Source: Macrostomum lignano (Eukaryota). From it: a DNA stretch of 64,000 nucleotides. Both the position numbers and the translations under genes were made by a program. Of this stretch, positions 9,336 through 54,800 are shown piece by piece. The DNA is taken from the NCBI GenBank assembly GCA_002269645.1, contig NIVC01002789.1, forward strand, positions 62,001 to 126,000. Direction: 5' to 3'. The notes below the pieces were generated by a model, which did no database searches, was not told the origin of the DNA, and saw only the letters and a list, made by a program, of their open reading frames with translations. The stretch's first letter is position 1. Every line of letters starts with the position of its first letter.

Positions 9336-10443
9336 AGCTACATGGCAGGCATGAATCATCAATTATAACCAGCGATGCAAGCACTTGCCTCTCAACTGAG
9401 TCTCCCATACCAGAATACTGACCCTAATGACAGAATTTTCTGTCCAGCGCAGCAGCTCAACGGCAGGGCGTGTCAGCTGCTTCACTACTGCTCCCTCTCA
9501 CCCGCCTGCTCGACATCTTAGGTGAGAATTTGCCGAGCGCCACTGCTGCTGCTCTTGTTAATTTCTTGCTAAAAGCGTAAAAACAGCCTCATGCTTTAAT
9601 TTTTTGTCTTACTCTCTTCTTTTTCTCCTCTTCTAGAAGAAGACAATTAAAAAATTCCAGATGCTAGAGAGCTACAAGCCACTAGTTGACAAGGCCTCAA
9701 CCTACCAGAGCCTCAACATTGTTTGCAATGGGCCACAGGCATGTTACACACTGTGCGGCACACAGCCTGGAGACTCGCTCCGCAGTGTCTCAGCTCGCAC
9801 GCTGAGCTCACAACATTAATAAAAAAGCCATAATACTAAGCTGAGTACTTGAGCGCAGAGACGCAGACCCTCGGTGTTGGGGGAGGCTGGGGTGGCACTC
9901 CGGCCGCCAGTTCATAATAATTCATGCATTTTCCTGTCCTACAGGGCTGGCTGTGTGCAGGCTCGCCGAAACTAAATGAGGGCTGCATGAGGTTATCTGT
10001 CTCTGTTTAGGGCACTGGGCGAGAGTTCGGGCGGTTGGCTAAAGAGCGCCTTTTGTGTGGCCATAAAATTTTCTCACGATTTGAGCAGAAAATTTGAGTT
10101 GCAAATCCGACTTGAATGCCTGGCAGGCTTGTCAAACGGCTGCGTAGGCCTCGGGGTGTTGCAGGTTGTCTGATGGGGCTTAGAAGCTGCAGCGCCAGTG
10201 TGGCCTGAAAAATGCCGCCTAAAGGGAGCCTCAAAACCAGTTTAACAGCAATCGGAGTTGCAGCTCATGCGGTGCAAATTCAAAATTAATTTCATTGCGA
10301 ACGGCCACTTTAAATTATCTGGCCAGCCTTGCCCAGTGCGTTTTGCAGAGAAGTGCAGGACTGCATCTCAGTACCCATGCTGAGAATTGGGGAGGCACTT
10401 TCGGCTACACTACAGCTAGTTCAGCTGCTGACCTACCGCCTCC

Positions 10444-12177
10444 ACTCCCAGATCTTCAGTTGCTGGGCCAGCCTCCCAGATCCTCAGTTGCTGAGCCAGC
10501 CTCCCAGATCTTCAGTTGCTGGGCCAGCCTCCCAGATCCTCAGTTGCTGGGCCAGCCTCCCAGATCCTCAGTTGCTGGGCCAGCCTCCCAGATCCCCTGT
10601 TGCTGGGCCAGCCTCCCAGATCCTCAGTTGCTGGGCCAGCCTCCCAGATCCTCAGTTGCTGGGCCAGCCTCCCAGATCTTCAGTTGCTGGGCCAGCCTCC
10701 CAGATCCTCAGTTGCTGGGCCAGCCTCCCAGATCCTCAGTTGCTGGGCCAGCCTCCCAGATCTTCAGTTGCTGGGCCAGCCTCCCAGATCCTCAGTTGCT
10801 GGGCCAGCCTCCCAGATCCTCAGTTGCTGGGCCAGCCTCCCAGATCCTCAGTTGCTGGGCCAGCCTCCCAGATCTTCAGTTGCTGGGCCAGCCTCCCAGA
10901 TCTTCAGTTGCTGGGCCAGCCTCCCAGATCCTCAGTTGCTGGGCCAGCCTCCCAGATCTTCAGTTGCTGGACCAGCCTCCCAGATCCTCAGTTGCTGGGC
11001 CAGCCTCCCAGATCCTCAGTTGCTGGGCCAGCCTCCCAGATCTTCAGTTGCTGGGCCAGCCTCCCAGATCCTCAGTTGCTGGGCCAGCCTCCCAGATCCT
11101 CAGTTGCTGGGCCAGCCTCCCAGATCCTCAGTTGCTGGGCCAGCCTCCCAGATCCTCAGTTGCTGGGCCAGCCTCCCAGATCCTCAGTTGCTGGGCCAGC
11201 CTCCCAGATCCCCTGTTGCTGGGCCAGCCTCCCAGATCCTCAGTTGCTGGGCCAGCCTCCCAGATCCTCAGTTGCTGGGCCAGCCTCCCAGATCTTCAGT
11301 TGCTGGGCCAGCCTCCCAGATCCTCAGTTGCTGGGCCAGCCTCCCAGATCCTCAGTTGCTGAGCCAGCCTCCCAGATCTTCAGTTGCTGGGCCAGCCTCC
11401 CAGATCTTCAGTTGCTGGGCCAGCCTCCCAGATCCTCAGTTGCTGGGCCAGCCTCCCAGATCCTCAGTTGCTGGGCCAGCCTCCCAGATCTTCAGTTGCT
11501 GGGCCAGCCTCCCAGATCCTCAGTTGCTGGGCCAGCCTCCCAGATCCTCAGTTGCTGGGCCAGCCTCCCAGATCTTCAGTTGCTGGGCCAGCCTCCCAGA
11601 TCCTCAGTTGCTGGGCCAGCCTCCCAGATCTTCAGCTGCTGAGCCAGCCTCCCAGATCTTCAGTTGCTGAGCCAGCCTCCCAGATCTTCAGTTTCTGAGC
11701 CAGCCTCCCAGATCTTCAGTTGCTGAGCCAGCCTCCCAGATCTTCAGTTGCTGGGCCAGCCTCCCAGATCTTCAGCTGCTGAGCCAGCCTCCCAGATCTT
11801 CAGTTGCTGAGCCAGCCTCCCAGATCCTCAGTTGCTGAGCCAGCCTCCCAGATCTTCAGTTGCTGGGCCAGCCTCCCAGATCTTCAGTTGCTGGGCCAGC
11901 CTCCCAGATCTTCAGCTGCTGAGCCAGCCTCCCAGATCTTCAGTTGCTGAGCCAGCCTCCCAGATCTTCAGTTGCTGAGCCAGCCTCCCAGATCTTCAGT
12001 TGCTGAGCCAGCCTCCCAGATCTTCAGTTGCTGAGCCAGCCTCCCAGATCTTCAGTTGCTGAGCCAGCCTCCCAGATCTTCAGTTGCTGAACCAGCCTCC
12101 CAGATCTTCAGTTGCTGGGCCAGCCTCCCAGATCTTCAGTTGCTGGGCCAGCCTCCCAGATCCTCAGTTGCTGGGCC
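10444..12177. repeat. 28-bp minisatellite (~62 copies)
   Basis: Unit ccagcctcccagatcctcagttgctggg; same family as 43395-43870, in the opposite orientation. Confidence 0.97.
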
Positions 12178-17039: not shown

Positions 17040-20000
17040 ATGCTGCCTCTCCTGCTAGCAATGCTCATCCTGGGCCCCCCGGCCTCCGCCCAGGTGAGCA
17101 TCAGCGGCCAGTTCGACCCTGCCGGGGCCAAGCAGGCAGCCGGCCGCAGCGTCTCCTTCACCTGCCAGGTGACCAACAAGCAGCCGCTGCTGTCCGTCCG
17201 CCTGACCTGCCCACTGGCCAAGGTCGGCACCATCTGCTTCGAGAACTGCAACCGCATCTGCGCCGACCCCAGCCTGTGCGCTGAGGAGCCGCGCCTGCTG
17301 CGGGTCACCTGCTCGAAGAGCAGCGCCGGCAGCGTGCAGACCTTTGCCTACCGGCTCGACATGCTGGACACCGGCTTCTCCGGCGACTGGGGGTGCAAGC
17401 ACGTGACCTACGAGAGCACCCCGAGGAGCCTCACAGTCTACCCCAGCCCCGCCATCGACTCCCTGGACTTCACCGCCGCCACCGTCGTGGAGTCGCAGTC
17501 GACAGCCGCCCTGTGCGTCGCCCAGCCCACTGTGGGCAGCCTGCGGTTCTCCTGGACCCGGCGCGACGGCCTCAGCATCCCGCACTCCAGCTCCGGGCCC
17601 AACGCCACCGCCTCTCGCCTGACCATCGCCAGCGCTCAGCGCACAGACGACGCCGTCTACGTGTGCACCGTCGAGAACGAAGTCGGCGTCAGCGCCAGCC
17701 GGGAGGCCGGCCTCACCGTCAACTATCCGCCAAGCTCCGTGCGCCTGTCTAGCAGCCTGTCGTCGCCGCTGCAGGCCGGCGTCTCCGTGACCTTCGCCTG
17801 CCAGGTGGGCGGCGGCCGGCCGGAGCCGCTGCGCCGGTTCTACCGGGAGCGCCTCGGACAGTCGCGCGAGGAGCTGCCGGCGGCCACCGTCACTCTGGAG
17901 GCGGCCGACAACGCGGCGAAATTCTACTGCAAAGCGGAGAGCGTCGGCATCATCGGCACGGAGGTCTGGAGCTCCCCGATCGCCTTTTCGGTCTCCTTTC
18001 CGCCCAGCGGCCTCGAGCTGCTGCAGCAGCCGCCGGGGCCGGCGACCGATGGCGGGCCGGCCAAGCAGTTCAGCTGCTCGGCCACCTCCAGCAGCAACCC
18101 GCCCAGCTCGGCCGCCTGGTACTCCATCAGCCCGCTGGGCCTGCAGGAGCAAATCTCGGACAGCCGCGTGTCCGTCAGCCAGACAGACGGGCCGAACTCG
18201 GCCAAGCAGCTGCAGAGCCGGCTGGACATCGCCGCCAGCCGCGACCTCAACGGCTTCAAATTCCGCTGCGTCCTGCTGTACAACTCGCGCGAGATCGGCC
18301 GCAAAGACGTCGCCCTGGAGGTGAAATTTTTGCCGAGCAGCTCCGCGCTGACGGCTAGCCCGGCCGACGGGGTGCTGGAGAACACGGCGCTGACCCTGCT
18401 GTGCCGCGCCGGCTCCGCGAACCCGCCAGCCCGGGTGCACTGGTTCCGGCAGTCCCGCGGCGGCGCCAGCTCGGCCGAGAATGTCACCGTGCAGGCGGTG
18501 GCAACGACGGAGCCGGCGGAGAACCTCGGCACTGCAGTCAGCAGCCGCCTGCTCGTCACGCAGACCAGGCGGGCAGACAACGGCACGGTGTACACCTGCA
18601 CCATCGTCTACGACAGCGCCGCAATCGGCGCCCTGTCCAAGTCGACCTCCGTGCTGGTGCTGTACCCGCCATCCGTCAACGTCACAGTGTCGCCCAGCTC
18701 GCCTCGCGAAGGCGACCCGGTGACGCTGAGCTGCCTGACAACCGGCGGGAGTCCCGACGGCAGCGGCGGCGGCTTCACCTTCGTATGGCGACATCGGAAT
18801 GCCAGCGGCGTCTGGGCGACGCTCGCCAGCGCAACGTCCACTTTGAGCATCGCGTCGGCCAGCTCAGGAGACAACGGCGTCTACCAGTGCTCGGTGGGGT
18901 CCCGCGGTGGCTCCGCCACAGCCTCGGCCGCCCTTAACCTGACCTTCGCCCCGGCCGCCTGGCCGGGCACCCAGTTGGCCGTGTCTTCCCCACTCGGACA
19001 GCCGGCCGAGCTGCTCCTGCGGGTGACGGCCAACCCGCCGCCCAGCGGGGCCGTCTGGCAGCGCCTCGGAGCCGATGGCACCAAGCAGGCGCTGAACCCG
19101 CGCCTGTCCACCGTCAGCAGCGCGGTGAACCTCACCTACCGCCTCGTCATCCCGGAGGTGACCTCGGCTGACTACGGCAACTATGTGTGCACCGTGGCCA
19201 ACTCAGTCGGCACTCGCGACTTCACCTTCAGCTTGAACCGGCCGGGGCCGCCCGCCACCCCCAGCGGCCTGCAGGTGCTGAACACCACGGCGGTGTCCGC
19301 CAACCTGCGCTGGCGCAGTGAATTCAACGGCGGCTTCGAGCAGACCTTCACGCTGCAGTGGCGGCCGCTCGGCAGCTCCGTGTGGAGCGTCGCCAACCAG
19401 AAGACCGGCCTGCGGGACCCCGGCTTCGGCCTGCCCGTCACCGAGACCGTCACCGCGCTGGAGTCGCAGGCCACCTACTATGCGCGAGTCCGAGCAGAGA
19501 ACTTCTACGGCGGCGCGATCAACGTCAGCCCCTTCACCGACGAGGTGGCGCTGACCACCCGGAAGCTGCCGCTGATCCCGGACGCATCGGTGGCGGCCCA
19601 GGTGACCTCCGGGCAGCTGGAGATCCAGTTCACAGCGCCGATGTCGCCGCACTACACCGGGGTGTACGTGAAGCTGTGCAGCCCCGGCTGCGTCCTGCGA
19701 CAGCTGCTGGAGTCGGAGGTCCGCTCAGGCCGCGCCAGCATCCTGCTGCCCGACCCGCAGGCGGCCTACAGCTTCTCCCTGCTGGTGCTGGACGGCCCGG
19801 TCACCGTCTACGAGACCCGCAGCTTCGACGCCCGGCTGAATGCCGCCGCGTCGACCACTCAGGCGAGCACCGCCAGCGCCGGCCTGTCCTTCGAGATCGT
19901 GCTGGGCATCTCCATCGGCAGCGCCGTGGTGGTGGCCATCCTGCTGGCCGCGGTCATCGTCACCGCCATCCTGCAGTGCCGTCGCGGCGGCGGCGACGGA

Positions 20001-20346
20001 GGCGGCGGCCCGGGCGTCGGCAAGTCGATGCGGTCGACCAACTCCAGCGACGTCACCAACGGGTCGGGCGGTTCGCCGGCGGCCATCGCTGCGGGCCACC
20101 CGGTGTGCGGCCAGGCGGTGCAGCTGGGCTACCGCGCCAGCCTGTCCAGCGGGATGGCACCGCAGGACGGCTACTACTGCCCGCCGCCCCCGGCCCTGGG
20201 CTCCGACTGCGGCTGCGGCAACGGCGGCGTCTGCGGCGGCTACGGCTATGGTGGCGGCGGCGGCGGCGGAGGCTTCTCGCCGGGCTCCCGGATGTCGGCT
20301 CAGGAGGCGCCGCTGCACCCGTCGTACTACTCATATCACCTGGCCG

Positions 20347-20392
<46 letters not shown>

Positions 20393-20885
20393 CCACATGT
20401 TGATGATGGCAGCTGCCGCCGCCGCCTCCCGCCAGCGACTCAACGGCACTAGCAACGGCTCCCTGAACAGCCAGCAGCCGCAGCAGCAGCACGGCAGGAT
20501 GCTGACGCCCGACCTGGTCCAGTCGGAGACTCCGGCGGGCGCAACGGAGCTGATCAGGTACAGCAGCCGCATCTCCTTGGCGAGCAGCCGCAGCGGCTTC
20601 AGCGTCATCCCGGCGACCTCCAGTGCGGCTGCGACGTCAACGCCAGCAGCAACTGGCGCTTCTTCGGCGCCGCCGGTCACTAGCGCCACCGCTGAGACGG
20701 CCTTCGCGTTCCCCAGCGGCGGCGGAGGTGGCGGCGGCGGCGGATTTCGCATCGTTGCCGGCAACGGCGGCCTGTCGGACATCGGCGCCGCTCTGCACAG
20801 CCTGCAGCAGCAGCCGACCTTCGTGGCGTCGCCGCTGACGCCGCACCTCGAGTCCAACATGGAGGCCATTGAGAACTACGTGTGA
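17040..20885 (+). CDS. Single-exon type I membrane Ig-superfamily adhesion protein, echinoid/nephrin-like (signal peptide, 7 Ig, 1 clear plus 1 degenerate FN3, TM, ~300-aa low-complexity tail), 1281 aa
   Basis: Uninterrupted ORF with strong GC3 bias. Signal peptide MLPLLLAMLILGPPASA. Ig F-strand motifs such as DDAVYVC, DNAAKFYC, DLNGFKFRC, DNGTVYTC, DNGVYQC and DYGNYVC. FN3 segment LRWRSEFNGGFEQTFTLQW resembles nephrin/echinoid/sidestep FN3. TM IVLGISIGSAVVVAILLAAVIVTAIL (~19896-19973). Tail has poly-Q (14) and poly-G and ends ENYV. Orthology not resolved. Confidence 0.9.
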
Positions 20886-36573: not shown

Positions 36574-39500
36574 TCAGCCGGAGTTGGCCAGCATTTGTCT
36601 CAAGTCGCGAACAGCGGCATGCAGTCGCGGGTCCTCGGACTCCTCGATGGCGGACCCGCCGACGGGCATCGCCGAGTGCGGGCGCGCTGCCCGCTGCTGC
36701 TGCTTCTCTGAGGCGGCCGCCGCCGCCGCGGCCTGCAGGAGGTTCCGCTCGCCCTCCACCAGGCGCAGCCGATCCCGCAGTCGCTCCGTGGCCAGCTGAA
36801 AGTCTTCAACAGCCTGACGGCCTTGAGCCTCGGCGGCCTCGCGTTCCCGCTGCAGCCGGCGCTCCGACTGGGCCAGCGCGGCCGCCAGCTTCGCCTGCTC
36901 GCGCGCCGACGCGTCCAGCGCGTCCGCGTGGCGCCCGGCTTCGAGGCGGCGCGCCTGGCGCTCCGAGTCCAGCGCTGATCGAGTTTCGGACAGGGCGGCG
37001 CGAAGCTCGGACACCGAGGAGAGTTCGGACAGCTGCGAGCGGGTGAGATTGATGGACTGGGGTGAGATTGGTGGACTGGGGTGAAATTGACGATCTGGGG
37101 TGAGATTGATGGACTGGGGTGAGATTGGTGGACTGGGGTGAAATTGACGATCTGGGGTGAGATTGATGGACTGGGGGAGATCGATGGACTTGGGTGAGAT
37201 GGATGGACTGGGGTGAGATTAATGGAGTGGGGGAAATTGATGAAGTGGGATGAGATTGATGGACTGGGATGAGATTGATGGAGTGGGATGAGATTGATGG
37301 AGTGGGGGTGAGATCGATGGACTGGGGGAGATTGATGGACTGGAGTGAGATTGATAAACTAGGGTGAGATTGATGGACTGGGATGAGATTGATGGACTGG
37401 GATGAGATTGATGGAGTGGGATGAGATTGATGGACTGGGATGAGATTGAAAGAGTGGGATGAGATTGATGGACTGGGATGAGATTGATGGAGTGGGATGA
37501 GATTGATGGAGTGGGGGTGAGATCGATGGACTGGAGTGAGATTGATGGACTGGAGTGAGATTGATAAACTAGGGTGAGATTGATGGACTGGGATGAGATT
37601 GATGGACTGGGATGAGATTGATGGAGTGGGATGAGATTGATGGACTGGGATGAGATTGAAAGAGTGGGATGAGATTGATGGAGTGGGGTGAGATTGACAA
37701 TTCAGGAGTGAGATTAACCAAGTGGGTAAGATTGAGACTATTAAATCAGACAGTAAAACATGCCGCCTCTGCACCTTCTCGGACGCAGCCAGCTGGTCGG
37801 TGGTGTCGGCCAGGCGGCCGAGGCGCCCCTCCATGTCGGTCAGGCGCTCCATCCACAGCCCGGCCGCAGATTCGAAGGCTGCCCTGGCCGATTCAACAGC
37901 CTCGGCCGCTTCGCTCGCCTCTCGCGCCCGACGCTCTGCCAGACGCCGGGCGTCCGACTGAAGCCGCTCCGCCAGCCGGTCCGCAGCGGCCAGCTTGCGC
38001 TCGGCGGCCGCAGCGCGCGCCTCCGCCTCGTCTAGGCGGCGGCGAAGATCGGAAACTGCGGCCTCGGCTTCGGCCTCCTACAGGGGTGGGGATTGGGACT
38101 CTCAGTGACCTTTGAGTGTGCCTGAGTGTCCATGTCTGCCTGCCTGTCTGTCTGCCTGTCTACCCCACCTACCGTCTGTTTCAGCTGCCTGTCTGCCCCA
38201 CCTAACATCTGTCTCAGCTGCCTGTCTGCCCCACCTACCATCTGTCTCAGCTGCCTGTCTGCCCCACCTACCATCTGTCTCAGCTGTCTGTCTGCCCCAC
38301 CTACCGTCTGTCTCAGCTGCCTGTCTGCTCCACCTACCGTCTGTCTCAGCTGCCTGTCTGCCCCACCTACCGTCTGTCTCAGCTGTCTGTTTGCCCTACC
38401 TACCGTCTGTCTCAGCTGCCTGTCTGCTCCACCTACCGTCTGTCTGCTCCACCTAACGTCTGTCTCAGCTGTTTGTCTGCCCACCTACCATCTGTCTCAG
38501 CTGCCTGTCTGCTCCACCTACCGTCTGTCTCAGCTGTCTGTCTGCCCTACCTACCGTCTGTCTCAGCTGCCTGTCTGCCCTACCTACCGTCTGTCTAAGC
38601 TGCCTGTCTGCCCCACTTACCATCTGTCTCAGCTGTCTGTCTGCTCCACCTACCGTCTGTCTCAGCTGTTTGTCTGCCCACCTACCATCTGTCTCAGCTG
38701 CCTGTCTGCTCCTCCTACCGTCTGTCTCAGCTGTCTGTCTGCTCCACCTACCGTCTGTCTCAGCTGTCTGTCTGCCCTACCTACCGTCTGTCTCAGCTGC
38801 CTGTCTGCCCTACCTACCGTCTGTCTCAGCTGCCTGTCTGCCCTACCTACCGTCTGTCTAAGCTGCCTGTCTGCCCCACTTACCGTCTGTCTCAGCTGTC
38901 TGTCGTGCGCCCAGCGCTCAGCCTCGGCCTGCACCAGCGCCTTGTACAGCCGGGGCCTCCAGGCCGCAGCCTCGCCGCCAGCGCTGGGCTCGGCAAGCAG
39001 CTCGGACTGCAGGGCCAGCCGGCGTTCCCGAAGCTCAGCGTCGGCTCGAAGGCGTTCGTTTTCAGCCTCAAGCTGGGCGGCTCTGGTGGCCAGGGCGTCG
39101 CGACTGTCATCCCAGTCCTGCATTGTAAAGCAGTCTAGGTTGTGAGAAACAACTCGAGAATCGAATAGATCTACATGTGTCTATAGATGCCTGTCATTGA
39201 TCTACATCTCTGTGTCTGTAGATGCCTGTCATTGATCTACATCTCTGTGTCTGTAGATATACATGTGTCTATAGATGCCTGTCATTGATCTACATCTCTG
39301 TGTCTGTAGATATACATGTGTCTATAGATGCCTGTCATTGATCTACATCTCTGTGTCTGTAGATGCCTGTCATTGATCTACATCTCTGTGTCTGTAGATA
39401 TACATGTGTCTATAGATGCCTGTCATTGATCTACATCTCTGTGTCTGTAGATATACATGTGTCTATAGATGCCTGTCATTGATCTACATCTCTGTGTCTG

Positions 39501-40800
39501 TAGATGCCTGTCATTGATCTACATCTCTGTGTCTGTAGATATACATGTGTCTATAGATGCCTGTCATTGATCTACATCTCTGTGTCTGTAGATATACATG
39601 TGTCTATAGATGCCTGTCATTGATCTACATCTCTGTGTCTGTAGATATACATGTGTCTATAGATGCCTGTCATTGATCTACATCTCTGTGTCTGTAGATA
39701 TACATGTGTCTATAGATGCCTGTCATTGATCTACATCTCTGTGTCTGTAGATATACATGTGTCTATAGATGCCTGTCATTGATATACATCTCTGTGTCTG
39801 TAGATATACATGTGTCTATAGATGCCTGTCATTGATATACATCTCTGTGTCTGTAGATCTACATGTGTCTATAGATGCCTGTCATAGATCTACATCTGTG
39901 TCTGTAGATGTACATGTATCTATAGATACCTGTAATTGATCTACAAGCGTCAATAAAGACGTGGTATAGATCTACATGTGTCCATAGATGCCTGCTGTAC
40001 ATCCACATGTGTCTATAGATTCCTACTGTAGATCAAAATCTGTCTCTGTAGACGTCGGCTATAGACGTACAAGTGTTCATAAATGCTTGCCATTGATCTA
40101 CAAGCGTCTATAGAAAAGTGTTATAGATCTCTACAAGTGTCTATAGATGCCTGCTGTAGATCTACACGTGTCTATAGATACCTAGAGATATCTGGAGATC
40201 CACGAGTCTATAGAGACCTGTGTAACCACGATGCCCTATAGATTTAAGCTTCTGTTTACACATGTCTATAGAAAAACCCGCTGCAGATCTACAGGCGCCT
40301 ATAGATTCCTGATTTTCTACCGCTCAAAACATGTGCCTACAGATGTCTGCTCAATATCTACAGACACTAATACTCAAAAGATTTGTCTGTACAGCAACAG
40401 GCGCTCGGCTCACCCGCGGCGTTGGCTCAGCCAGCTCCATCCGCTGCTGCCTCTCCTGATCCAGCAGGCTCTGCGTCTCCAGCTGCTGCCGCCGCAGCCG
40501 CTCCAACTCTCGACGCTGCCGGGCGAGGTCGCGCTCCAGCTGCCGGCAGGAGCGGCACGGAGCCGCCGCAGGAGGGGCGTCGGCAGGGACAAACCGAACC
40601 GAGTGCGGCGCCGCAGCGGCAGCCGACGGCAGGAAGGCATCCGGAGGCAGCAGGAGGCTGTCATCCAGCGAGGAGGCAACATCGGTGGTGGCAAAGCTGG
40701 TTGCCATGGGCAACTGCGGTGCGGACTGAGACTCGGGATCGCAATAGTAGTAATTATTATTATTTTGGTTAGTTCGCTGTCTGTCTAAGAAAGCGGCCAT
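36574..40800 (-). CDS. CCHCR1: CCHCR1-like coiled-coil alpha-helical rod protein; exons 40800-~40390 (donor uncertain), 39117-38884, 38077-37775, 37032-36574
   Basis: Exons 2-4 join in phase 0 through GT-AG introns. Recognised from memory as similar to CCHCR1: LALQSELL..WRPRLYKALVQAEAE (cf. LALQEEEL..WREKVFALMVQLKAQ) and AREQAKLAAALAQSERRLQRERE..RLRDRLRLVEGERNLL (cf. RREHAKAVVSLRQIQRRAAQEKE..RLARRLQELERDKNLM). No search was run. Confidence 0.68.
37040..37700. repeat. 17-18-bp minisatellite, CCHCR1 intron 3
   Basis: Unit gggtgagattgatggact and variants; abuts the 3' splice site. Confidence 0.92.
38130..38900. repeat. 33-bp minisatellite (~23 copies), CCHCR1 intron 2; the unit contains the exon end and the 5' splice site
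   Basis: Minus-strand unit gcagacaggcagctgagacagacg|gtaggtggg. Confidence 0.93.
39160..40300. repeat. 53/35-bp minisatellite, degenerating toward 40300, CCHCR1 intron 1
   Basis: Unit tagatgcctgtcattgatctacatctctgtgtctgtagatatacatgtgtcta. Confidence 0.92.
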
Positions 40801-40821
40801 TGTGGGGATGCTCTGGTCTCT

Positions 40822-40915
40822 CTGAAAGCGAGTTCAATATTTCATCTATTAATTCTTAAAACGAAAAAAATCGGTACAAATGAAAAAATGTAAAAAAAAG
40901 AGTATAACAATGAAA
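40822..40915 (-). promoter_or_regulatory. Candidate 3' splice / trans-splice acceptor with a long U-rich tract, 21 nt before the CCHCR1 ATG
   Basis: Minus strand reads tcttttttttacattttttcatttgtaccgatttttttcgtttt...ctcgctttcag|agagaccagagcatccccacaATG. No upstream donor identified. Confidence 0.55.
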
Positions 40916-41164
40916 ACTATCCTGGCGCAAAAATCGACTTTCATATGATTATTCCTTCGTTATTAATTACATTTTAAAACGCTTGGATTGGAAAAATGCA
41001 TCATTATAGATCTAGTATAAAACCAGGAAGATACCGTAGAAGTGAGAGGGGAGGCTTCAATAGAAGAGAGGGCAGGGAGTGAAGTATAGAGCAGAGGTGA
41101 GAAAGCCCAGTCAGAATTTAGACAGGTTAAAAACCACAAGTCCTCAGACAGGACACAGTCAGAC

Positions 41165-41185
41165 GACAGACAAAGACAGACAGAC

Positions 41186-41224
<39 letters not shown>

Positions 41225-41255
41225 TATAGATGGACAGACAAACAGACAGACAAGC

Positions 41256-41296
<41 letters not shown>

Positions 41297-41327
41297 TATA
41301 GATGGACAGACAAACAGACAGACAAGC

Positions 41328-41367
<40 letters not shown>

Positions 41368-41495
41368 GACAGGCAGACAGACAGACAGACAGGCAGACAG
41401 ACAGACAGACAGACAGACAGACAGGCAGGCAGACAGACAGACATACAGACAGGCAGGCAGGCAGGCAGACAGGCAGACAGGCAGACAGACAGGCA
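41165..41495. repeat. (GACA)n microsatellite between MRM1 and CCHCR1
   Basis: Direct read. Confidence 0.95.
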
Positions 41496-41523
41496 AAGCG
41501 CAAAACTCCGCAGTCCGGAGGCC

Positions 41524-43343
41524 TCAGGCCGCAGCAGACCGCAGCCAGCCCGAGACGCAGTGCAGCAGGATGCCGGCCGCCACTCCCACATTTAGATGCG
41601 GCATGGCGCAGGCGGCGCCAGCTTGTGGAATTCGCAGCACCAGGTTGCAGAGGCTCAGAAGCTCAGCTGACAGGCCGGAGCCCTCGCTGCCAAGCAGCAG
41701 AAGCACCGGACCGCTGGGCGGATGCGGCAGCAGCTCCGACAGCCGATCGACGCCGGCGCAAGGCACTCCAGGGGCGCCGTCATCGCCTCCCGAGCTGCCT
41801 AGCGCCAGCCAGCCAGCCTGGCGCCATTGGCGCACAAACTCAGCGCTGCTGGTGGGCAGGGCGCGCAAGTCCGTGGCCTCCAGAGCGCCGCAGCTCACCT
41901 TGGAGACCACTGGCAGAGGGGGGCAGCTGTGGGTGCCCGGTATGAGCACCGGGCTGATACCGTAGAACAGGCAGGTGCGGAGCAGACTGCCGAAGTTAAG
42001 GATGTCCACCACCTGCGGGTGCGTGCTGATTCATGTGATCTTGCCCATTCTTCAATGCATCTCTTGCCGATTCTCTCCTATGCATCTCTTGCCGATTCTC
42101 TCCAATGCATCTCTTGCCCATTCTCTCCAATGCATCTCTTGCCGATTCTCTCCAATGCATCTCTTGCCCATTCTCTCCAATGCATCTCTTGCCGATTCTC
42201 TCCAATGCATCTCTTGCCGATTCTCTCCAATGCATCTCTTGCCGATTCTCTCCAATGCATCTCTTGCCGATTCTCTCCAATGCATCTCTTGCCGATTCTC
42301 TCCAATGCATCTCTTGCCGATTCTCTCCAATGCATCTCTTGCCCATTCTCTCCAATGCATCTCTTGCCGATTCTCTCCAATGCATCTCTTGCCGATTCTC
42401 TCCAATGCATCTCTTGCCGATTCTCTCCAATGCATCTCTTGCCGATTCTCTCCAATGCATCTCTTGCCGATTCTCTCCAATGCATCTCTTGCCGATTCTC
42501 TCCAATGCATCTCTTGCCGATTCTCTCCAATGCATCTCTTGCCGATTCTCTCCAATGCATCTCTTGCCGATTCTCTCCAATGCATCTCTTGCCGATTCTC
42601 TCCAATGCATCTCTTGCCGATTCTCCCCTGCATCTCTTGCCGATTCTCTCCAATGCATCTCTTGCCGATTCTCCCCTGCATCTCTCACCCATTATACCCT
42701 GCATCTCTCACCCATTATACCCTGCATCTCTTGCCCATTCTACCCTGCATCTCTTCCCCATTATACCCTGCATCTCTCCCCCATTATACCCTGCATCTCT
42801 TCCCCATTCTCCCCTTCATCTCTTCCCCATTCTCCCCTTCATCTCTTCCCCATTCTCCCCTGCATCTCTTCCCCATTCTCCCCTGCATCTCTCCCCCACC
42901 TGGTCCAGCAGCACACACAGCCGACTCGCCGCCAGCTCAGAGCGGCAGTCGGAGGCACAGCCGGGCAGCACAGGCACAGGGAAGTGTCCGCACCGCAGCG
43001 CGAATCCCTGATGCGCCCGACCCCGGCACAGAGCGGCCAGTTCGCGCCTGTCAGCGTACCTGACCAGGTGAGCATAGCTGGCAGCGATGAGCTGGCGCAG
43101 CTCGGCCGAGCTGGAGCTGTCGCAGCCGAAGTCTTCAATGACGTCGCTTTGCCCTTGGTGCCGAATGTCAACGTAGATTTCGTCAATTCGACGACGGCGA
43201 GACAACAGCGCCTGCCAGACCGGGTGAATGCCGTACACCAGCTCGGAGCCGCCGCCGCCGCTGTTGCTGAACAACCTGTGGCACAGCAGCAGCGACAGTC
43301 GGGCAGCTGACGGTCGCAGTAGGAGCTGGAGAAAAAGGGCTGT
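41524..43343 (-). CDS. MRM1: Mitochondrial rRNA 2'-O-methyltransferase 1 (SpoU/TrmH SPOUT family); exons 43343 (or 43325)-42900 and 42012-41524; start codon unresolved
   Basis: Substrate-binding segment ELVYGIHPVWQALLSRRRRIDEIYV and LAALCRGRAHQG. SPOUT motifs LDQ|VVDILNFGSLLRT, SCPPLPVVSKVSCGALE, LLLLGSEGSGLS and LNVGVAAGILLH. Phase-0 intron 42899-42013 (cag|gtg...cag|gtg). N-terminal LLLRPSAARLSLLLCHRLFS resembles a mitochondrial presequence. Confidence 0.87.
42045..42895. repeat. 25-bp minisatellite, MRM1 intron
   Basis: Unit ttgccgattctctccaatgcatctc; begins directly at the 5' splice site. Confidence 0.95.
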
Positions 43344-43394
43344 CTGAAGAAGCCGGTCGGTGAAATATTGGAGATTCGAAAGTTGGAATGTGAC

Positions 43395-43870
43395 GGTGGC
43401 CCAGCAACTGGGGATCTGAGAGGCTGGCATAGCAACTGGGGATCTGGGAGACTGGCCCAGCAACTGAGGATCTGGGATGCTGGCCTAGCAACTGGGGATC
43501 TGGAAGGCTGGCCTAGCAACTGGGGATCTGGGAGACTGGCCCAGCAACTGGGGATCTGGAAGGCTGGCCCAGCAACTGGGGATCTGGAAGGCTGGCCCAG
43601 CAATTGGGGATCTGGAAGGCTGGCCCAGCCAGCAACTGGGGATCTGGAAGGCTGGCCCAGCCAGCAACTGGGGATCTGGAAGGCTGGCCCAGCAACTGGG
43701 GATCTGGAAGGCTGGCCCAGCAACTGGGGATCTGGAAGGCTGGCCCAGCAACTGGGGATCTGGAAGGCTGGCCCAGCAACTGACGGTCTGGGAGGGCGAT
43801 GGCCCAGCAACTGAGGATTTGGGAGGCTGGTGGCCCAGCAACTGAGGATCTGGGAGGCTGGCACAGCAAC
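43395..43870. repeat. 28-bp minisatellite between RPL31 and MRM1
   Basis: Unit ggctggcccagcaactggggatctggaa, the reverse complement of the 10444-12177 family. Confidence 0.93.
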
Positions 43871-44075
43871 TACCTTTCTAGAACTAATCACAAGCCACAA
43901 GCACAGGTAGAGATGCTCTCTAAATAATATGAAAGTAAAGAACAAGCGCAGAGACAGTGCAATCCAGCTAAGAACACGCTCAACAGCGTCAGCCCCTGTA
44001 TTTCATGCTCAATCAAGAACCTGCCCTCGCAATCTATCAGCAAGTCAGTCCCATCTAGTCAAGTTTAACCTCGCA

Positions 44076-44438
44076 CTACTCGGCCTCAACATTGATGGTC
44101 TGCTTGCCCTTGAACTCGGCGCAGGGCACGTAGGAGACCAGGGTGTACAGCTTGTGCGCGCTGTCCTCGTCCTCGTTGCGCTTCCTGGCCAAGCGGACGC
44201 GGACGCGGAACGGCACATTGCGGACGCCTTGGCTCCACACGAACTTGTTCAGCCGGGTGTCCAGCCGCACGTCCGGGGTGCCCATCATTCTCTCCGCGAA
44301 TTTGCGAATCTCCGTCATTGCACGCGGTGCCCGGCGCTTGAAACCGATGCCGTGAATGCGCTTGTGCAGGTTGATGGTGTACTCCCGGGTCACCACGTCT
44401 TTTAGGGCGCTCTTTTTCTTCTCACGTCGGGGAGCCAT
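44076..44438 (-). CDS. RPL31: 60S ribosomal protein L31 (eL31), 120 aa, intronless CDS
   Basis: [93 protein letters not shown] is an unmistakable eL31. The upstream extension in the ORF track comes from a 30-bp tandem duplication. Confidence 0.98.
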
Positions 44439-44639
44439 GGACTGGCGGGCATGCAATTGGGGGATTTTTGTTCTGTAGACTTGACAATAAATAATTTTTG
44501 TTTTGTAGACTTGACAATAAATAATTTTTGTCTGTTTCACATTGCTGCCACTTCAGTTAGGATCTCTAGGCTGAATTCAGACCTTGCAGGATTCAAATTA
44601 TAATTTTCCAAGTGTTACTGTTAGTAGAATATATATGAC

Positions 44640-44650
44640 GAAGAAGAGCG
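44640..44650 (-). promoter_or_regulatory. Possible TOP/TCT-like pyrimidine initiator for RPL31
   Basis: gctcttcttc about 200 nt upstream of the ATG. Ribosomal-protein mRNAs typically start in such tracts, but the match is short and imperfect. Confidence 0.25.
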
Positions 44651-51800: not shown

Positions 51801-54800
51801 AGGCTTGGACGAAGCTAGGTGCCGTCATTGTCAGGAGGACATGCGTGTGCTGCTTAGACCAGTGCGCACATTCGACTGGACTCGTATCTGGTGCAGTCTG
51901 GTGTATTCACTGAGATTGTGTGGATCTGCCTCCTCGCATCACCTCAACCAGGCTCAATTTCTTTTGTAGAATTTTCGTGCGCTGCTTAACTGCATCTTGT
52001 GCCTGCTGAGTGATGCCAAGAATTGTGCCACACAATAATTTGGCCCATAAACTACTCGTATATTATACATATGTATGCACAGCACACACACACGCAGTTC
52101 ATTCACATTTAACGTACTAGTTAATGGAATTCTCATCTCATGAGCTCTAGTCTATGGACAAACCTGAAATTACTAGAATATCTAGACAGATCTAAACTTC
52201 TTTGAGCAGCGCGCTGCGCTGCGAGCAAATACATGTAGATTCCTTAGCGCAACTAATTAATAGTGTAGTACAGTCTACAGCCTGAAGTAGCCTGTGTAAG
52301 ATGCGGAGGGATGATTTTTGCATAGGAAGCCACTACGGTAAGGTTGATGGAACTATGGGGAGGTGAGAGATTCAAAGCGAGGGATGGAAGCCATGCATAG
52401 TTCGATCATAAGTTTGATTATTGCATGAGTCTGGGGATGCATTAACGAGAGGCAGACGAGAGCATAGAAATAAAGCGGGCTAAATATATTAATACACAAA
52501 ATTACATGTACTAGCTAGTAATTTCAGAATGGTCAGCGACTCCTCCGATTTGTATCCGCGACCGCGTGCCCACAAATCCCCGGCAGACCCTGTCGCAGTT
52601 GGTGGTTGTGCACAGAATACAATGTAATAATTCAATTTTGTCTATTTTCCAAAAAGTTTCAAAAAATGAATTAATTAAAATAAATTTGAATTATTTTAAG
52701 TTAATTGGAGTAAAATGTCTAATAAGTAACTATGATTTTTTATTTTAAGTACATGTAGCTTTGGTATAAGTATTAATGTAATGAGTACTTAAAGTAAAAT
52801 CAAGCAAGTTATAGTTTTCAGAAATTATGCTACAAATAATCAAATATATACTAGTATCTGAATTCCTTTATTAAGGAACATGCAGTCGATATTAAATCCA
52901 CAATGTGCTTTTTGGTGTTCAAGGATAGTTACCTGACTTTTTCTATTATTAGTTAGATTTTATTATATTTAATGTAAAAATGAACAATTCTATTCAAGGT
53001 AAAAATGAACATTCTTTATTTGTCGAATCATCTTGCCTTTGAAAAGATACATAGTGAAAACTTGATTTTTAATTCAACCTTTCAAGACTTATTTAGACTT
53101 CTCAATTCAGTGATTAGTTAAACTGATCGAAGTTCTTTCGAGTGCATGCTATAATAATTTCGCACTTTTTCGCACACGATAATTTTAAATGTCTGGGATT
53201 TAGAGCAGAGTAACAAAATGCTGTGCTCAAAAACATTTCCTTTGTCAATTTCTTGTTCTTTTATTTTTGCAAAAGAAATTTAACTGCATATTTAAAATAA
53301 AAATGGAAGAAAATTTTATTTTCTCTTTAATATTTTTGTCGTTTATTTTCCGCAACAAAGAATAACAAATAGCCTTGATTTCTTCTCAATTTCAAGTTTT
53401 CTTGTGGTTTTAGTAGCAGCTTCTTACAGAAATTGTCAAAAGAATTTTTTTGTACGATTATTGGTCAATGTATAAACTTTTTTTGCAATAACAAAAAGTT
53501 GTGACCTAGCTTTGAGAACGACCCTGCAAGTCTTACATTATGCAAGTTCAAATCTGCGCGTTTCTAAGAAAAACACTTCGTTTTGATACACGTATCTTGT
53601 AAGATATTTTCGTAACTTATTTCTTTCTTTTAAACGAACGGAAATTTTAGTATAATATAGACGCGATTTGGGCGAGGAGAAAACAACTCGTTCTGATCAG
53701 CTTCGAATCAGCCTTTCAGCAATTACTGGCTTTAGTTTTTAGGATTTAAAAGATTTAAAAGATTTAAAAGCTCTCGAGCTGCCCCCTCCCACAGAAGATA
53801 TTTGCCCTAGCGCAGCTTGGTGGCATTAGTGGAATTTTAGAGGACAGAGGCAACCTCTACGACAACTTTTGTGGCAGCGTGAAGGCTCAGAGAAACGGCA
53901 GAACTTTGACAGATCAGGAAGCGACACAAATCCGATAGATCTCATCAGAGAAACGGTGAGAATTCGATGGATTAGCGAGAGGATGACTGTGTAATTAGAG
54001 AAACTGGGACATAAGAAATAATATATGGCCAACGCTAATGATGCGATTGCTGTGCTAGCTGAAGAACAACGAAACAGACTTCAAATTATGACCTCAAAGG
54101 ATGTACATGTATGTGAAAATTCAGAGAAGTTCACGCCTGGCCAAGACACCAGGGTCTGGCTGACCGCGTTTGACCAGCGCTGTGAAGCTGAAGGTATTGA
54201 AGAAGATCACCAGAAGCAAGAGCTTCTCGCAACCTGCATGGCTACTGCGTTTGCAGCAGTTCAGCGTCTAAACCTCGATCCCAGATGCCCAGTCAAAGCA
54301 ATGCCGTTGCCTCGACGTCGCTAACACGTCGCAAAATAACGTCGCCAAACCAGCCATTTTGTCGCGCGCGGCGACGTCGCCATTACGACCCCAGGCGACG
54401 TCAGAATTTCACGTACTGGCGACCAAACGACGACCATCTATTACAGATTGCTTAGCACCTTCAATATAGTGCGAATCTCGAAATCATAATTCAATTAATT
54501 TTTACTAAGATTATAGATGAAATTAAACGAAGATTAATAAGCTACCTTGCTCTGGTTAAATATCTTGATTGAATTTATAAATTATTCAATATAATTCAAT
54601 TTAAAAAAGGTTTTTTGTTGGTTTATTTAGAATTTTAGTTATTGTTATCAGAAAAGTAATTTTTACACAGATACACTCAAAGACAAATGATTTTGAATTT
54701 ACAAATTCATTTTGAAGTGCAGATATTTTACTCACTAAGAAGGGTCAAAGGGACAATAAAAAACAGTGTCAAACGAAATTGCTCCAGATTTTCCAGTTAA

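What the first reader, a model, noticed from the sequence alone, without database searches (positions are those of the whole stretch)
36574..44650. Candidate spliced-leader operon RPL31 > MRM1 > CCHCR1 with every acceptor in frame with its ORF
Seen: three unrelated genes on the same strand with ~730 bp between each stop and the next coding start, mostly tandem repeat and no obvious promoter-sized unique sequence. U-rich tracts lie in both gaps (~43945-43921, 40915-40860). Each gene has an AG acceptor in phase 0 with its ORF: ccgccag|tcc-ATG (RPL31, 3 nt), ttcag| or ccag| directly onto codons (MRM1), and tttcag| plus 21 stop-free nt then ATG (CCHCR1). Known: flatworms trans-splice, some have operons, and the flatworm leader ends in AUG that can initiate translation. 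Inference: a polycistron coupling a cytosolic ribosomal protein, a mitoribosome maturation enzyme and a centriole/P-body coiled-coil protein, with acceptors phased to accept the leader AUG. Depends on the host being a flatworm.
Basis: partly seen in the sequence, partly recalled or inferred. Interest (0 to 1): 0.75.

Follow-up and report, generated by a model that had tools for sequence, protein, structure and literature searches.

The report
Annotated flatworm operon; MRM1 lacks start codon
This is an ordinary trans-spliced three-gene unit of the flatworm Macrostomum lignano that the public annotation already treats as one transcript; the one fresh point is that its middle gene (MRM1-like) has no start codon of its own and probably borrows the AUG of the spliced leader.

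Summary
The window is Macrostomum lignano (Mlig_3_7 contig NIVC01002789.1; window + 62000 = contig position). This flatworm has one 35-nt spliced leader (SL) ending in AUG, and about 15% of its genes lie in operons.

All three minus-strand genes are real:
- eL31, single exon.
- An RlmB/MRM1-type SpoU methyltransferase, 2 exons.
- A 460-aa, 4-exon coiled-coil protein with no detectable homologue. The CCHCR1 label is unsupported.

**Operon reading: supported, but already annotated.**
- In a paralogous copy the two genes are Mlig023477g1 and g2, two genes cut from one transcriptional unit.
- Repeat-adjusted spacers (about 260 and 365 nt) pass the published operon criterion.

**"Every acceptor in frame": fails as a rule.**
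- Two paralogues and an SL-tail footprint in the assembly put an eL31 junction 11 nt before the ATG, out of frame.
- The coiled-coil gene's annotated 5' ends fall on three tandem AGs in the three copies.

**MRM1 does need phase 0.** No genomic AUG is conserved, and one copy has a stop codon directly upstream. The SL AUG is therefore the likely initiator. MRM1 has no CDS in GenBank. No SL reads were seen directly.

The parts
44076..44438 (-). eL31 (RPL31) CDS, single exon, 120 aa
   Evidence: GenBank annotates it as a 121-aa 5'-partial CDS starting at 44441.
44442..44449 (-). CCCGCCAG.
   Evidence: The annotated 5'-partial CDS starts at 44441.
44450..44457 (-). ATTGCATG, identical to the last 8 nt of the M. 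lignano SL. It replaces the ATTCCCAG acceptor of the two paralogues. Probably a footprint of the SL|CCCGCCAG junction, 11 nt before the ATG and out of frame.
   Evidence: Alignment. Paralogue CDSs are 123 aa and start RQSM. The assembly was Pilon-polished with RNA-seq reads. SL sequence.
43997..44002 (-). AATACA followed by the GU-rich CTGTTGAGCGTGTT. Likely eL31 poly(A) signal, about 75 nt after the stop.
   Evidence: The same AATACA plus GU-rich arrangement is seen in the divergent eL31 locus L005. Inference only.
43921..43945 (-). T-rich tract, 64% T
   Evidence: Conserved in all three copies.
43397..43871 (-). 28-bp minisatellite, 16.5 copies, in the eL31-MRM1 spacer. Each unit carries TTCCAG.
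   Evidence: There are only a few units in paralogue L004, where this gap is 333 nt. The same repeat family occurs at window 10329-11642.
43344..43349 (-). CTTCAG, the candidate SL acceptor of MRM1. Exon start 43343, phase 0.
   Evidence: Matches the published [T/C]TNCAG trans-splice motif. It reads CTTTAG in L003, which creates an in-frame stop directly upstream.
43326..43331 (-). CTCCAG, an alternative in-phase acceptor. Exon start 43325.
   Evidence: Conserved in all three copies.
42900..43343 (-). MRM1-like exon 1. No ATG. The N-terminal 33 residues contain no acidic residue and are Leu/Arg/Ser-rich, like a mitochondrial presequence.
   Evidence: The RlmB alignment starts at residue 30-35.
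42013..42899 (-). MRM1 intron (GT..AG), almost entirely a 25-bp tandem repeat (42039-42892)
   Evidence: Intron length is 887 nt here, 2512 nt in L003 and 339 nt in L004.
41524..42012 (-). MRM1-like exon 2 (SpoU catalytic domain) including the stop codon
41155..41492 (-). (CTGT)n microsatellite downstream of the MRM1 stop, in the MRM1 to coiled-coil spacer
40948..40964 (-). AATAAC and AATAAT, poly(A)-signal-like hexamers about 130-140 nt upstream of the next acceptor
   Evidence: Conserved in all three copies. Inference only.
40860..40915 (-). T-rich tract (64% T) between the putative MRM1 3' end and the coiled-coil acceptor
   Evidence: Its 3' part is replaced by other sequence in L004.
40818..40827 (-). 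TTTCAGAGAG, three tandem AG acceptors giving exon starts 40821 (phase 0), 40819 and 40817. TTTCAG is the only [T/C]TNCAG motif in the 723-nt gap.
   Evidence: Annotated CDS 5' ends are 467 aa (L003), 466 aa (window, starting at 40818) and 465 aa (L004), on identical sequence.
40414..40800 (-). Coiled-coil gene exon 1 (ATG at 40800)
   Evidence: Matches PAA55207.1 BOX15_Mlig018771g4.
38884..39117 (-). Coiled-coil gene exon 2
37775..38077 (-). Coiled-coil gene exon 3
36574..37032 (-). Coiled-coil gene exon 4 including the stop codon

Best explanation
The region is one copy of a triplicated M. lignano transcriptional unit: eL31, then an MRM1-like mitochondrial rRNA 2'-O-methyltransferase, then an orphan coiled-coil gene.

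Proposed mechanism:
- One promoter lies upstream of eL31, in the AT-rich sequence beyond 44441. It drives a precursor that runs through spacers and introns inflated by tandem repeats.
- Each cistron is released by 3'-end cleavage. The likely signals are AATACA about 75 nt after the eL31 stop and AATAAC/AATAAT about 130-140 nt before the coiled-coil acceptor.
- The single 35-nt SL is then added at [T/C]TNCAG-type acceptors.
- eL31 and the coiled-coil gene have their own AUGs. Their acceptors are not consistently phased with the SL AUG.
- MRM1 has no usable genomic AUG. It is translated from the SL's 3'-terminal AUG joined in phase at cttcAG|ACA (43343) or ctccAG|CTC (43325), giving MTALFLQLLLRPSAARL..., a presequence-like N-terminus.

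Shown here: host identity, gene models, annotated 5' ends at AG acceptors, shared transcriptional-unit name in a paralogous copy, spacer sizes, and the lack of a conserved AUG.

Inferred: polycistronic transcription from one promoter, the MRM1 trans-splice site, the poly(A) sites, and mitochondrial targeting.
For: 1. **Host.** The window lies in GCA_002269645.1, contig NIVC01002789.1, which is M. lignano Mlig_3_7. In this species 30% of genes are trans-spliced and 15% are in operons. Repeats inflate operon spacers, and the repeat-adjusted mode is about 100 bp with a threshold of 1 kb (PMC8629364).
2. **Annotated 5' ends.**
   - The eL31 CDS is 5'-partial and starts at 44441, directly after an AG. 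The coiled-coil CDS is 5'-partial and starts at 40818.
   - The same holds in two paralogous loci, and for RPS21 and NAC downstream of a second eL31 locus.
   - The annotators cut transcriptional units at peaks of SL-read mapping (TBONE).
3. **Shared unit name.** In L003, eL31 is PAA76447.1 (Mlig023477g1) and the coiled-coil gene is PAA76448.1 (Mlig023477g2). Suppl. Fig. 5a of PMC5730564 states that Mlig030697.g1 and .g2 are two trans-spliced genes of unit Mlig030697.1. The window's coiled-coil gene is Mlig018771g4 and L004's is Mlig018771g2.
4. **Spacers.** Stop-to-acceptor distances are 732 nt and 702 nt. Minus TRF repeats these are 257 nt and 364 nt. In L004 the first gap is only 333 nt.
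5. **Gene order.** It is the same in all three copies.
6. **MRM1 start.**
   - The only in-frame ATG in the window (43430) lies inside a repeat unit.
   - L003 has TAG immediately before ACA and no ATG at all.
   - L004's in-frame ATG is at a different place.
   - The only methionine in the 310 residues is near the C-terminus.
   - The three copies show 9 synonymous and 8 nonsynonymous variable codons, pN/pS 0.33, binomial p=0.022. The ORF therefore appears to be under purifying selection.
   - SL-AUG initiation is established in flatworms: more than 40 S. mansoni cDNAs require it (Cheng 2006, cited in PMC9851317).
7. **SL-tail octamer.** ATTGCATG sits at 44457-44450, exactly at the paralogues' annotated junction. 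The assembly was polished with RNA-seq reads. This is an independent trace that eL31 mRNA carries the SL.
Against: - No SL-containing read, long read or TSS datum could be inspected here. All RNA evidence is second-hand, through CDS boundaries and locus tags.
- The annotators' STAR mapping allowed up to 1000 multi-mappings per read. Dispersed minisatellites could therefore bridge neighbouring genes artificially.
- The unit was cut into only two genes (g1, g2). No separate MRM1 gene was defined and no MRM1 CDS is in GenBank in any copy. This may mean that no SL peak was found at MRM1. It may also result from the pipeline's merge rule or from its repeat and non-coding filters.
- The window's own eL31 locus tag was hidden, so its membership as Mlig018771g3 is inferred.
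- At the second eL31 locus the eL31 genes are g1 and g2 of their own cluster. There the unit did not extend across the repeat spacer.
- The AT-rich sequence about 100-330 nt upstream of the coiled-coil acceptor could hold an internal promoter.
Confidence: 0.7

Rival explanations
1. The three neighbours are transcribed independently and trans-spliced monocistronically. The shared transcriptional unit is an assembly artefact caused by read-through or by multi-mapped repeat reads.
For: About 60% of trans-spliced M. lignano genes are not assigned to operons. STAR was run allowing up to 1000 multi-mappings. The 28-bp spacer repeat also occurs elsewhere in the window. At the other eL31 locus the unit stops before the repeat spacer. 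AT-rich unique sequence lies upstream of the coiled-coil acceptor.
Against: In L004 the eL31 stop-to-MRM1 acceptor gap is only 333 nt including the eL31 3'UTR. The putative MRM1 poly(A) signal lies about 130-140 nt before the coiled-coil acceptor, the classic operon spacing. The unit was assembled across the cluster in at least one copy, and by inference in three.
Confidence: 0.2
2. The acceptors of all three genes are deliberately phased so that the SL AUG extends or initiates each protein.
For: In-phase, open AG sites exist for all three genes in the window. The window's eL31 annotation starts at the in-phase site, and L003's coiled-coil CDS starts at the in-phase AG. RPS21 and NAC at the other eL31 locus also start in phase 0.
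Against: Two eL31 paralogues and the SL-tail footprint use a junction 11 nt before the ATG, phase 2. The eL31 of the second locus has its AG 2 nt before the ATG. The three coiled-coil copies are annotated from all three phases on identical sequence. In S. mansoni only 28% of trans-spliced transcripts are in frame, about the chance rate. eL31 and the coiled-coil gene have their own AUGs.
Confidence: 0.1
3. MRM1 does not use the SL AUG. It starts at copy-specific genomic ATGs or a non-AUG codon, or an undetected upstream exon supplies the start, or these copies are decaying pseudogenes.
For: In-frame ATGs exist in the window (43430) and in L004. No MRM1 gene or CDS was called by the annotators. 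The three copies are only about 1-2% diverged, so an intact ORF is weak evidence of function.
Against: The ATGs are at non-homologous positions inside or next to a variable repeat. L003 has a stop codon immediately upstream of the ORF. No ATG-plus-donor exon is visible in the unique part of the spacer (read). pN/pS is 0.33, p=0.022. Both candidate acceptors match the trans-splice motif and are conserved or still AG.
Confidence: 0.15

Closest known systems
Macrostomum lignano SL operons / polycistronic transcriptional units (Wudarski et al. 2017, PMC5730564; Ustyantsev & Berezikov 2021, PMC8629364)
   Same: Same species and the same single 35-nt SL. Same-strand genes, a [T/C]TNCAG acceptor, repeat-inflated spacers with a short repeat-adjusted distance. 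Genes are named g1 and g2 of one unit in the public annotation.
   Different: Nothing essential. MRM1, the middle cistron, was not separated or given a CDS in the GenBank annotation.
Flatworm SL 3'-terminal AUG used as initiator methionine (Cheng, Cohen, Ndegwa & Davis 2006, J Biol Chem 281:733; cited in PMC9851317 and PMC12582326)
   Same: The MRM1 ORF is open from an in-phase acceptor and has no conserved AUG of its own. The SL ends in AUG.
   Different: This was shown experimentally in Schistosoma mansoni. Here it is inferred from three genomic copies in a free-living macrostomid, with no cDNA or protein evidence.
Caenorhabditis elegans operons (about 100-nt intercistronic regions, U-rich element, SL2)
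   Same: A poly(A)-signal-like hexamer, then a T-rich tract, then the acceptor, all within about 140 nt upstream of the coiled-coil gene. Housekeeping, ribosome and mitochondrial genes are mixed in one unit.
   Different: M. lignano has one SL and no SL2-type specialisation. The spacers carry hundreds of nt of tandem repeats. No function has been shown for the T-rich tract, and it is partly replaced in paralogue L004.
CCHCR1 (Pfam HCR, PF07111)
   Same: A long alpha-helical coiled-coil protein, judged from composition only.
   Different: No sequence similarity is detectable by Pfam, PDB or a 1.84-billion-protein phmmer search. It is 460 aa, compared with about 780 aa for human CCHCR1 (from memory).

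Membership tests
M. lignano SL-resolved operon (criteria of PMC8629364) | The host performs SL trans-splicing. | tested here: met
   Contig identity. SL and operon literature.
M. lignano SL-resolved operon (criteria of PMC8629364) | Adjacent genes on the same strand, not interrupted by an opposite-strand gene. | tested here: met
   Gene models. No other called gene in window 34076-54441.
M. lignano SL-resolved operon (criteria of PMC8629364) | The downstream gene is SL trans-spliced. | tested here: inconclusive
   Coiled-coil gene: indirect yes. Its 5'-partial CDS starts at AG acceptors in three copies. MRM1: inferred only from the missing AUG and the motif. No SL reads were seen.
M. lignano SL-resolved operon (criteria of PMC8629364) | Repeat-adjusted intergenic distance below 1 kb. 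| tested here: met
   257 nt and 364 nt from stop to acceptor after subtracting TRF arrays. 333 nt unadjusted in L004.
M. lignano SL-resolved operon (criteria of PMC8629364) | A polycistronic precursor (one transcriptional unit) is observed. | tested here: met
   Indirect. Mlig023477g1 (eL31) and g2 (coiled-coil) are in L003, and the naming rule is given. For the window copy, only Mlig018771g4 was seen.
M. lignano SL-resolved operon (criteria of PMC8629364) | A single promoter with no internal TSS. | not testable with these tools
   Needs RAMPAGE/CAGE or reporter assays.
SL-AUG-initiated ORF (Cheng et al. 2006) | The SL ends in AUG. | tested here: met
   The M. lignano SL ends ...TTGCATG.
SL-AUG-initiated ORF (Cheng et al. 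2006) | The acceptor is in phase 0 with the ORF, with no intervening stop. | tested here: met
   MRM1 sites 43343 and 43325, conserved in three copies.
SL-AUG-initiated ORF (Cheng et al. 2006) | The ORF lacks its own usable in-frame AUG. | tested here: met
   MRM1. Not met for eL31 or the coiled-coil gene, which have their own ATGs.
SL-AUG-initiated ORF (Cheng et al. 2006) | The SL is actually joined at that site and translation starts at its AUG. | not testable with these tools
   No transcript or protein data were reachable. The homologue search found no close relative.
CCHCR1 / Pfam HCR (PF07111) | Significant match to the HCR family or to CCHCR1 orthologues. | tested here: not met
   No Pfam hit at E<=10. 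No PDB hit at E<=1. Only a self-hit among 1.84e9 representatives.
MRM1 / RlmB-type SpoU rRNA Gm methyltransferase | SpoU_sub_bind N-terminal domain plus SpoU_methylase catalytic domain, with best similarity to RlmB. | tested here: met
   Pfam. RlmB TIGR00186 at 7.3e-26 over 232 of 240 profile positions, though below the bacterial equivalog cut-off. Best PDB match is RlmB/YjfH 1gz0 at 2e-12. MRM1 versus MRM3 orthology was not resolved by a tree.
MRM1 / RlmB-type SpoU rRNA Gm methyltransferase | Mitochondrial targeting. | tested here: inconclusive
   A 33-residue N-terminal extension with 3 Arg, 1 His, 10 Leu and no Asp or Glu. It exists only if translation starts at the SL AUG. No predictor was run.
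Ribosomal protein eL31 | Full-length match to Ribosomal_L31e and to metazoan eL31 structures. | tested here: met

The most novel reading that the evidence does not exclude
In M. lignano, trans-splice acceptors might be preferentially phased with the downstream ORF, so that the SL AUG routinely initiates or N-terminally extends proteins. In the handful of loci seen here, MRM1, RPS21 and NAC are in phase 0, as is one annotated form each of eL31 and of the coiled-coil gene. MRM1 would be an obligate case that ordinary annotation misses. If so, a class of conserved genes without a genomic start codon would be systematically absent from flatworm proteomes.
Probability: 0.12. Interest if true: 0.55.

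Novelty: new member of a known kind. Interest (0 to 1): 0.27.

Why it matters
The operon is routine for M. lignano and is already implicit in the GenBank locus tags. It changes nothing conceptually.

Two practical points follow:
- A conserved mitochondrial rRNA methyltransferase gene appears to have no start codon in the genome and no CDS in the public annotation. SL-donated AUGs can therefore hide real genes from ORF-based annotation in flatworms.
- RNA-seq polishing seems to have written the tail of the SL into the assembly at a trans-splice junction, destroying an acceptor in one copy. Such artefacts could mislead splice-site and promoter analyses. Conversely, they can be mined as fossil evidence of trans-splicing.

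Tried and rejected
- **Homologue search.** The search for homologous proteins timed out four times. The one run that completed found no relative at E<=1e-20 for an MRM1 fragment. No orthologues from other species and no transcript assemblies could be brought in.
- **Exact look-ups.** The 120-aa eL31, an SL-extended 'MSMAP...' eL31 and the MRM1 exon-2 ORF are not on record. Many guessed MRM1 forms are not in the collection.
- **SL gene.** No SL RNA gene lies in the window.
- **Literature.** Supplementary tables of PMC5730564 and PMC5816591 do not hold RPL31, MRM1, CCHCR1 or the Mlig IDs. No paper mentions these IDs.
- **Rejected: bacterial-style ORFs.** The long ORFs across repeats listed are artefacts of the repeat periodicity.
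- **Rejected: an upstream cis-spliced coding exon for MRM1.** The only ATGs in the unique spacer are followed by stops within 6 codons and have no donor site (read).
- **Rejected: gene-order conservation as deep evidence.** The three copies are 93-99% identical recent duplicates. A more divergent eL31 locus has different neighbours, RPS21 and NAC.

Full report
**Host and coordinates**

An intronless 1281-aa Ig/FN3 ORF in the window is carried by GenBank assembly GCA_002269645.1, contig NIVC01002789.1. Several papers identify that accession as the Macrostomum lignano Mlig_3_7 assembly of Wudarski et al. 2017. From the loci returned, window position + 62000 = contig position, in the same orientation.

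M. lignano has a single 35-nt spliced leader, CGGTCTCTTACTGCGAAGACTCAATTTATTGCATG. About 30% of its genes are trans-spliced and about 15% are assigned to operons. The acceptor motif is [T/C]TNCAG. Operon spacers are known to be inflated by repeats. After subtracting repeats, distances between trans-spliced genes peak near 100 bp, and 1 kb is used as the operon threshold (PMC8629364).

**Gene models**

All three genes are on the minus strand.
- **eL31** is a single exon, 44438..44076, 120 aa. It matches Pfam Ribosomal_L31e at 7.7e-45, and its best PDB relatives are animal eL31.
- **The second gene** has two exons, 43343..42900 and 42012..41524, joined by a GT-AG intron. It carries SpoU_sub_bind and SpoU_methylase domains.
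  - Its best NCBIfam model is RlmB (7.3e-26, nearly full length). Its best solved relative is E. coli RlmB/YjfH (2e-12).
  - The RlmB alignment begins at residue 30-35. This leaves an N-terminal extension with no acidic residue, rich in Leu, Arg and Ser.
  - 'MRM1-like' is a fair label. MRM1 versus MRM3 was not resolved by a tree.
- **The third gene** has four GT-AG, phase-0 exons (40800..40414, 39117..38884, 38077..37775, 37032..36574) and encodes 460 aa. This model is 100% identical to residues 7-466 of GenBank PAA55207.1.
  - It has no Pfam match even at E<=10 and no PDB match at E<=1.
  - In a phmmer scan of 1.84 billion representative proteins, it hits only itself.
  - The CCHCR1 label is not supported. 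I treat it as a lineage-restricted coiled-coil protein.

Exons are 61-74% G+C. The introns are 39-58% G+C and consist largely of tandem repeats. 52% of 36574..44650 is tandem repeat.

- The two gaps are 732 and 723 nt. Tandem arrays account for 475 and 338 nt of them.
- Both T-rich tracts are 64% T.
- The named AG sites exist and are in phase 0 with open frames.
- TTTCAG at 40827-40822 is the only [T/C]TNCAG motif in the second gap. CTTCAG at 43349-43344 is the only such motif in the first gap outside the repeat units.
- Each gene also has nearby AGs in other phases. The in-phase rate reported for S. mansoni is 28%, about the chance rate. Three in-phase sites picked by eye are therefore not statistically remarkable.

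**What the public annotation says**

The GenBank CDS for eL31 on this contig is a 121-aa 5'-partial product, SMAPRRE..., starting at window 44441. That is the first base after cgccAG. The coiled-coil CDS is a 466-aa 5'-partial product starting at 40818.

The annotators built genome-guided transcriptional units. They then cut them into genes at peaks of mapped, SL-trimmed reads and at T-fill poly(A) sites, using their TBONE pipeline. ORFs were called with TransDecoder. A CDS that runs open to a transcript 5' end sitting directly on an AG is what a trans-splice cut produces.

The same pattern recurs in two paralogous loci. These are L003 on NIVC01000822.1 and L004 on NIVC01001319.1. It also recurs for RPS21 and NAC downstream of a second, more divergent eL31 locus.

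The locus tags are informative:
- In L003, eL31 is PAA76447.1 (BOX15_Mlig023477g1). The coiled-coil gene is the next accession, PAA76448.1 (BOX15_Mlig023477g2).
- The authors' Supplementary Fig. [quoted passage not shown] A shared prefix therefore means one unit.
- The window's coiled-coil gene is Mlig018771g4 and L004's is Mlig018771g2. This fits two genes per unit in two copies.
- The window's own eL31 tag was masked. Its being g3 is an inference.

The operon reading is thus already implicit in the 2017 annotation.

**Spacer anatomy and comparison of copies**

The three copies are 93-99% identical in unique sequence. They differ greatly in repeat copy number.

| Feature | Window | L003 | L004 |
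|---|---|---|---|
| eL31 stop to MRM1 acceptor | 732 nt | about 756 nt | 333 nt |
| MRM1 intron | 887 nt | 2512 nt | 339 nt |

- Stop-to-acceptor distances minus repeats are 257 and 364 nt in the window. Both are well inside the published criterion.
- About 75 nt after the eL31 stop there is AATACA followed by a GU-rich stretch. The same arrangement is present in the divergent eL31 locus L005. I take it as the likely poly(A) signal.
- AATAAC/AATAAT lie about 130-140 nt before the coiled-coil acceptor, followed by the T-rich tract. This resembles the C. elegans layout of poly(A) site, U-rich element and acceptor. The 3' part of the tract is replaced in L004, and no function is shown.

**Phasing**

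*eL31.* Both paralogues are annotated as 123-aa products, RQSMAP.... This places the exon start after aattcccAG|CCCGCCAG, 11 nt before the ATG, so the SL AUG is out of frame.
- In the window the homologous bases read aattGCATG|CCCGCCAG. ATTGCATG is the last 8 nt of the SL, placed exactly at that junction.
- Three substitutions are clustered within 5 nt against a background of 3-7% variable sites in the aligned unique sequence.
- Mlig_3_7 was polished with Pilon using RNA-seq reads as well as DNA reads. The simplest explanation is that abundant SL-eL31 reads overwrote the acceptor in this copy. A real cDNA-mediated conversion is the alternative.
- Either way it is a trace of an SL|CCCGCCAG junction.
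- The window's annotation then falls on the next AG (44441, phase 0). Both sites may be used. The octamer alone is not rare: 3 hits in the window against about 2 expected. The position is what matters.

*Coiled-coil gene.* The sequence around cAGAGAG is identical in all three copies. Yet the annotated CDSs are 467, 466 and 465 aa. These correspond to exon starts after the first, second and third AG, in phases 0, 1 and 2. This suggests either wobble among tandem acceptors or pipeline jitter with multi-mapped reads. It does not support selected phasing.

*MRM1.* This case is different.
- The 310-residue ORF contains a single Met, near its C-terminus.
- The only in-frame genomic ATG upstream in the window (43430) is a variant base triplet inside the last repeat unit.
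- L004 has an in-frame ATG at a non-homologous place before the repeat.
- L003 has none. Its acceptor reads ctttAG, which puts an in-frame TAG directly before the first codon, ACA.
- Both candidate acceptors, cttcAG|ACA and ctccAG|CTC, fit the trans-splice motif and are in phase.
- Across the three copies there are 9 synonymous and 8 nonsynonymous variable codons. pN/pS is 0.33, with binomial p=0.022 against neutrality.
- The start common to all copies is therefore the SL AUG, giving M-TALFLQLLLRPSAARLSLLLC..., which looks like a mitochondrial presequence.
- This mechanism is established in S. mansoni (Cheng et al. 2006, cited).

The weak point is that the annotators did not define MRM1 as a separate gene, and GenBank holds no MRM1 CDS in any copy. 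There are three possible reasons:
- No SL peak was detected, plausible for a low-abundance mRNA.
- The rule that merges an ORF-bearing transcript with a following ORF-less one across repeats was applied.
- The GenBank filter against non-coding and repeat-overlapping transcripts removed it.

I could not tell which applies.

**Verdict**

- The sequence-level observation is real.
- The operon interpretation is supported by second-hand RNA evidence and by the published species-specific criteria. It is an ordinary and effectively already annotated M. lignano transcriptional unit.
- The 'every acceptor in frame' idea is not supported as a general design.
- The CCHCR1 label is unsupported.
- The residual interest lies in MRM1 as a probable SL-AUG-dependent gene missing from the annotation, and in the SL footprint left in the assembly.
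- No direct SL reads, long reads or TSS data could be examined here, so polycistronic transcription remains inferred (confidence about 0.7).

Noticed in passing
window 44450-44457 (minus strand): ATTGCATG, the last 8 nt of the spliced leader, replaces the ATTCCCAG acceptor found in both paralogues, exactly at their annotated trans-splice junction. The assembly was Pilon-polished with RNA-seq reads, so this is probably an SL read footprint written into the genome sequence. A cDNA-mediated conversion is the alternative.
   Followed up: partly
window 52418-52427 (plus strand): A 10-nt match to the SL 3' end (TTATTGCATG|AGTCTGG; 0.12 expected by chance) in AT-rich sequence with no called gene nearby. 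It could be another polishing footprint, an SL-derived fragment, or chance.
   Followed up: no
L005 10001-11910 and L006 10001-13917: A second, synonymously diverged eL31 locus type has eL31 > RPS21 > NAC on one strand. The repeat-laden spacers are about 1.26 kb and 0.77 kb. The RPS21 (L005) and NAC (L006) CDSs are 5'-partial, start on the base after a CAG, and are both in phase 0. eL31 thus heads two different same-strand clusters.
   Followed up: partly
L006 about 11700-11710: The RPS21 copy in L006 lacks one G of a GGG run present in L005 (catcatcggccg versus catcatcgggccg). Its annotated CDS starts in a shifted position (94 aa from 11626). This is either a frameshifted copy or a homopolymer assembly error.
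   Followed up: no
window 10329-11642 (plus strand): The 28-bp minisatellite of the eL31-MRM1 spacer (unit about TGGCCCAGCAACTGGGGATCTGGAAGGC) also forms a 1.3-kb array elsewhere in the window. The spacer repeat is therefore a dispersed family. Each unit contains a TTCCAG acceptor-like motif.
   Followed up: no
window 42013-42899, 39118-40413, 38078-38883, 37033-37774: Every intron of the MRM1-like and coiled-coil genes is filled with its own tandem repeat (periods 25, 53/106, 33/99 and 19 bp). Copy number differs several-fold between near-identical paralogues; the MRM1 intron is 339, 887 or 2512 nt.
   Followed up: partly
window 17040-20885 (plus strand): An intronless 1281-aa ORF with a signal peptide, Ig-like and FN3-like repeats (by eye; no domain scan, and no Pfam hit on record), a transmembrane segment, and a Gly/Gln-rich tail. 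It is about 70% G+C and is annotated in GenBank.
   Followed up: no
window 44464-44535 (minus strand): A 30-bp unit (AAAAATTATTTATTGTCAAGTCTACAGAAC) directly upstream of the eL31 acceptor is present in 2.4 copies here, one copy in L003 and none in L004. The putative outron or promoter-proximal region is therefore length-polymorphic between copies.
   Followed up: partly
L003 5890-5895: The MRM1 acceptor CTTCAG is CTTTAG in this paralogue. It is still an AG acceptor, but the change creates an in-frame stop immediately upstream of the ORF.
   Followed up: yes
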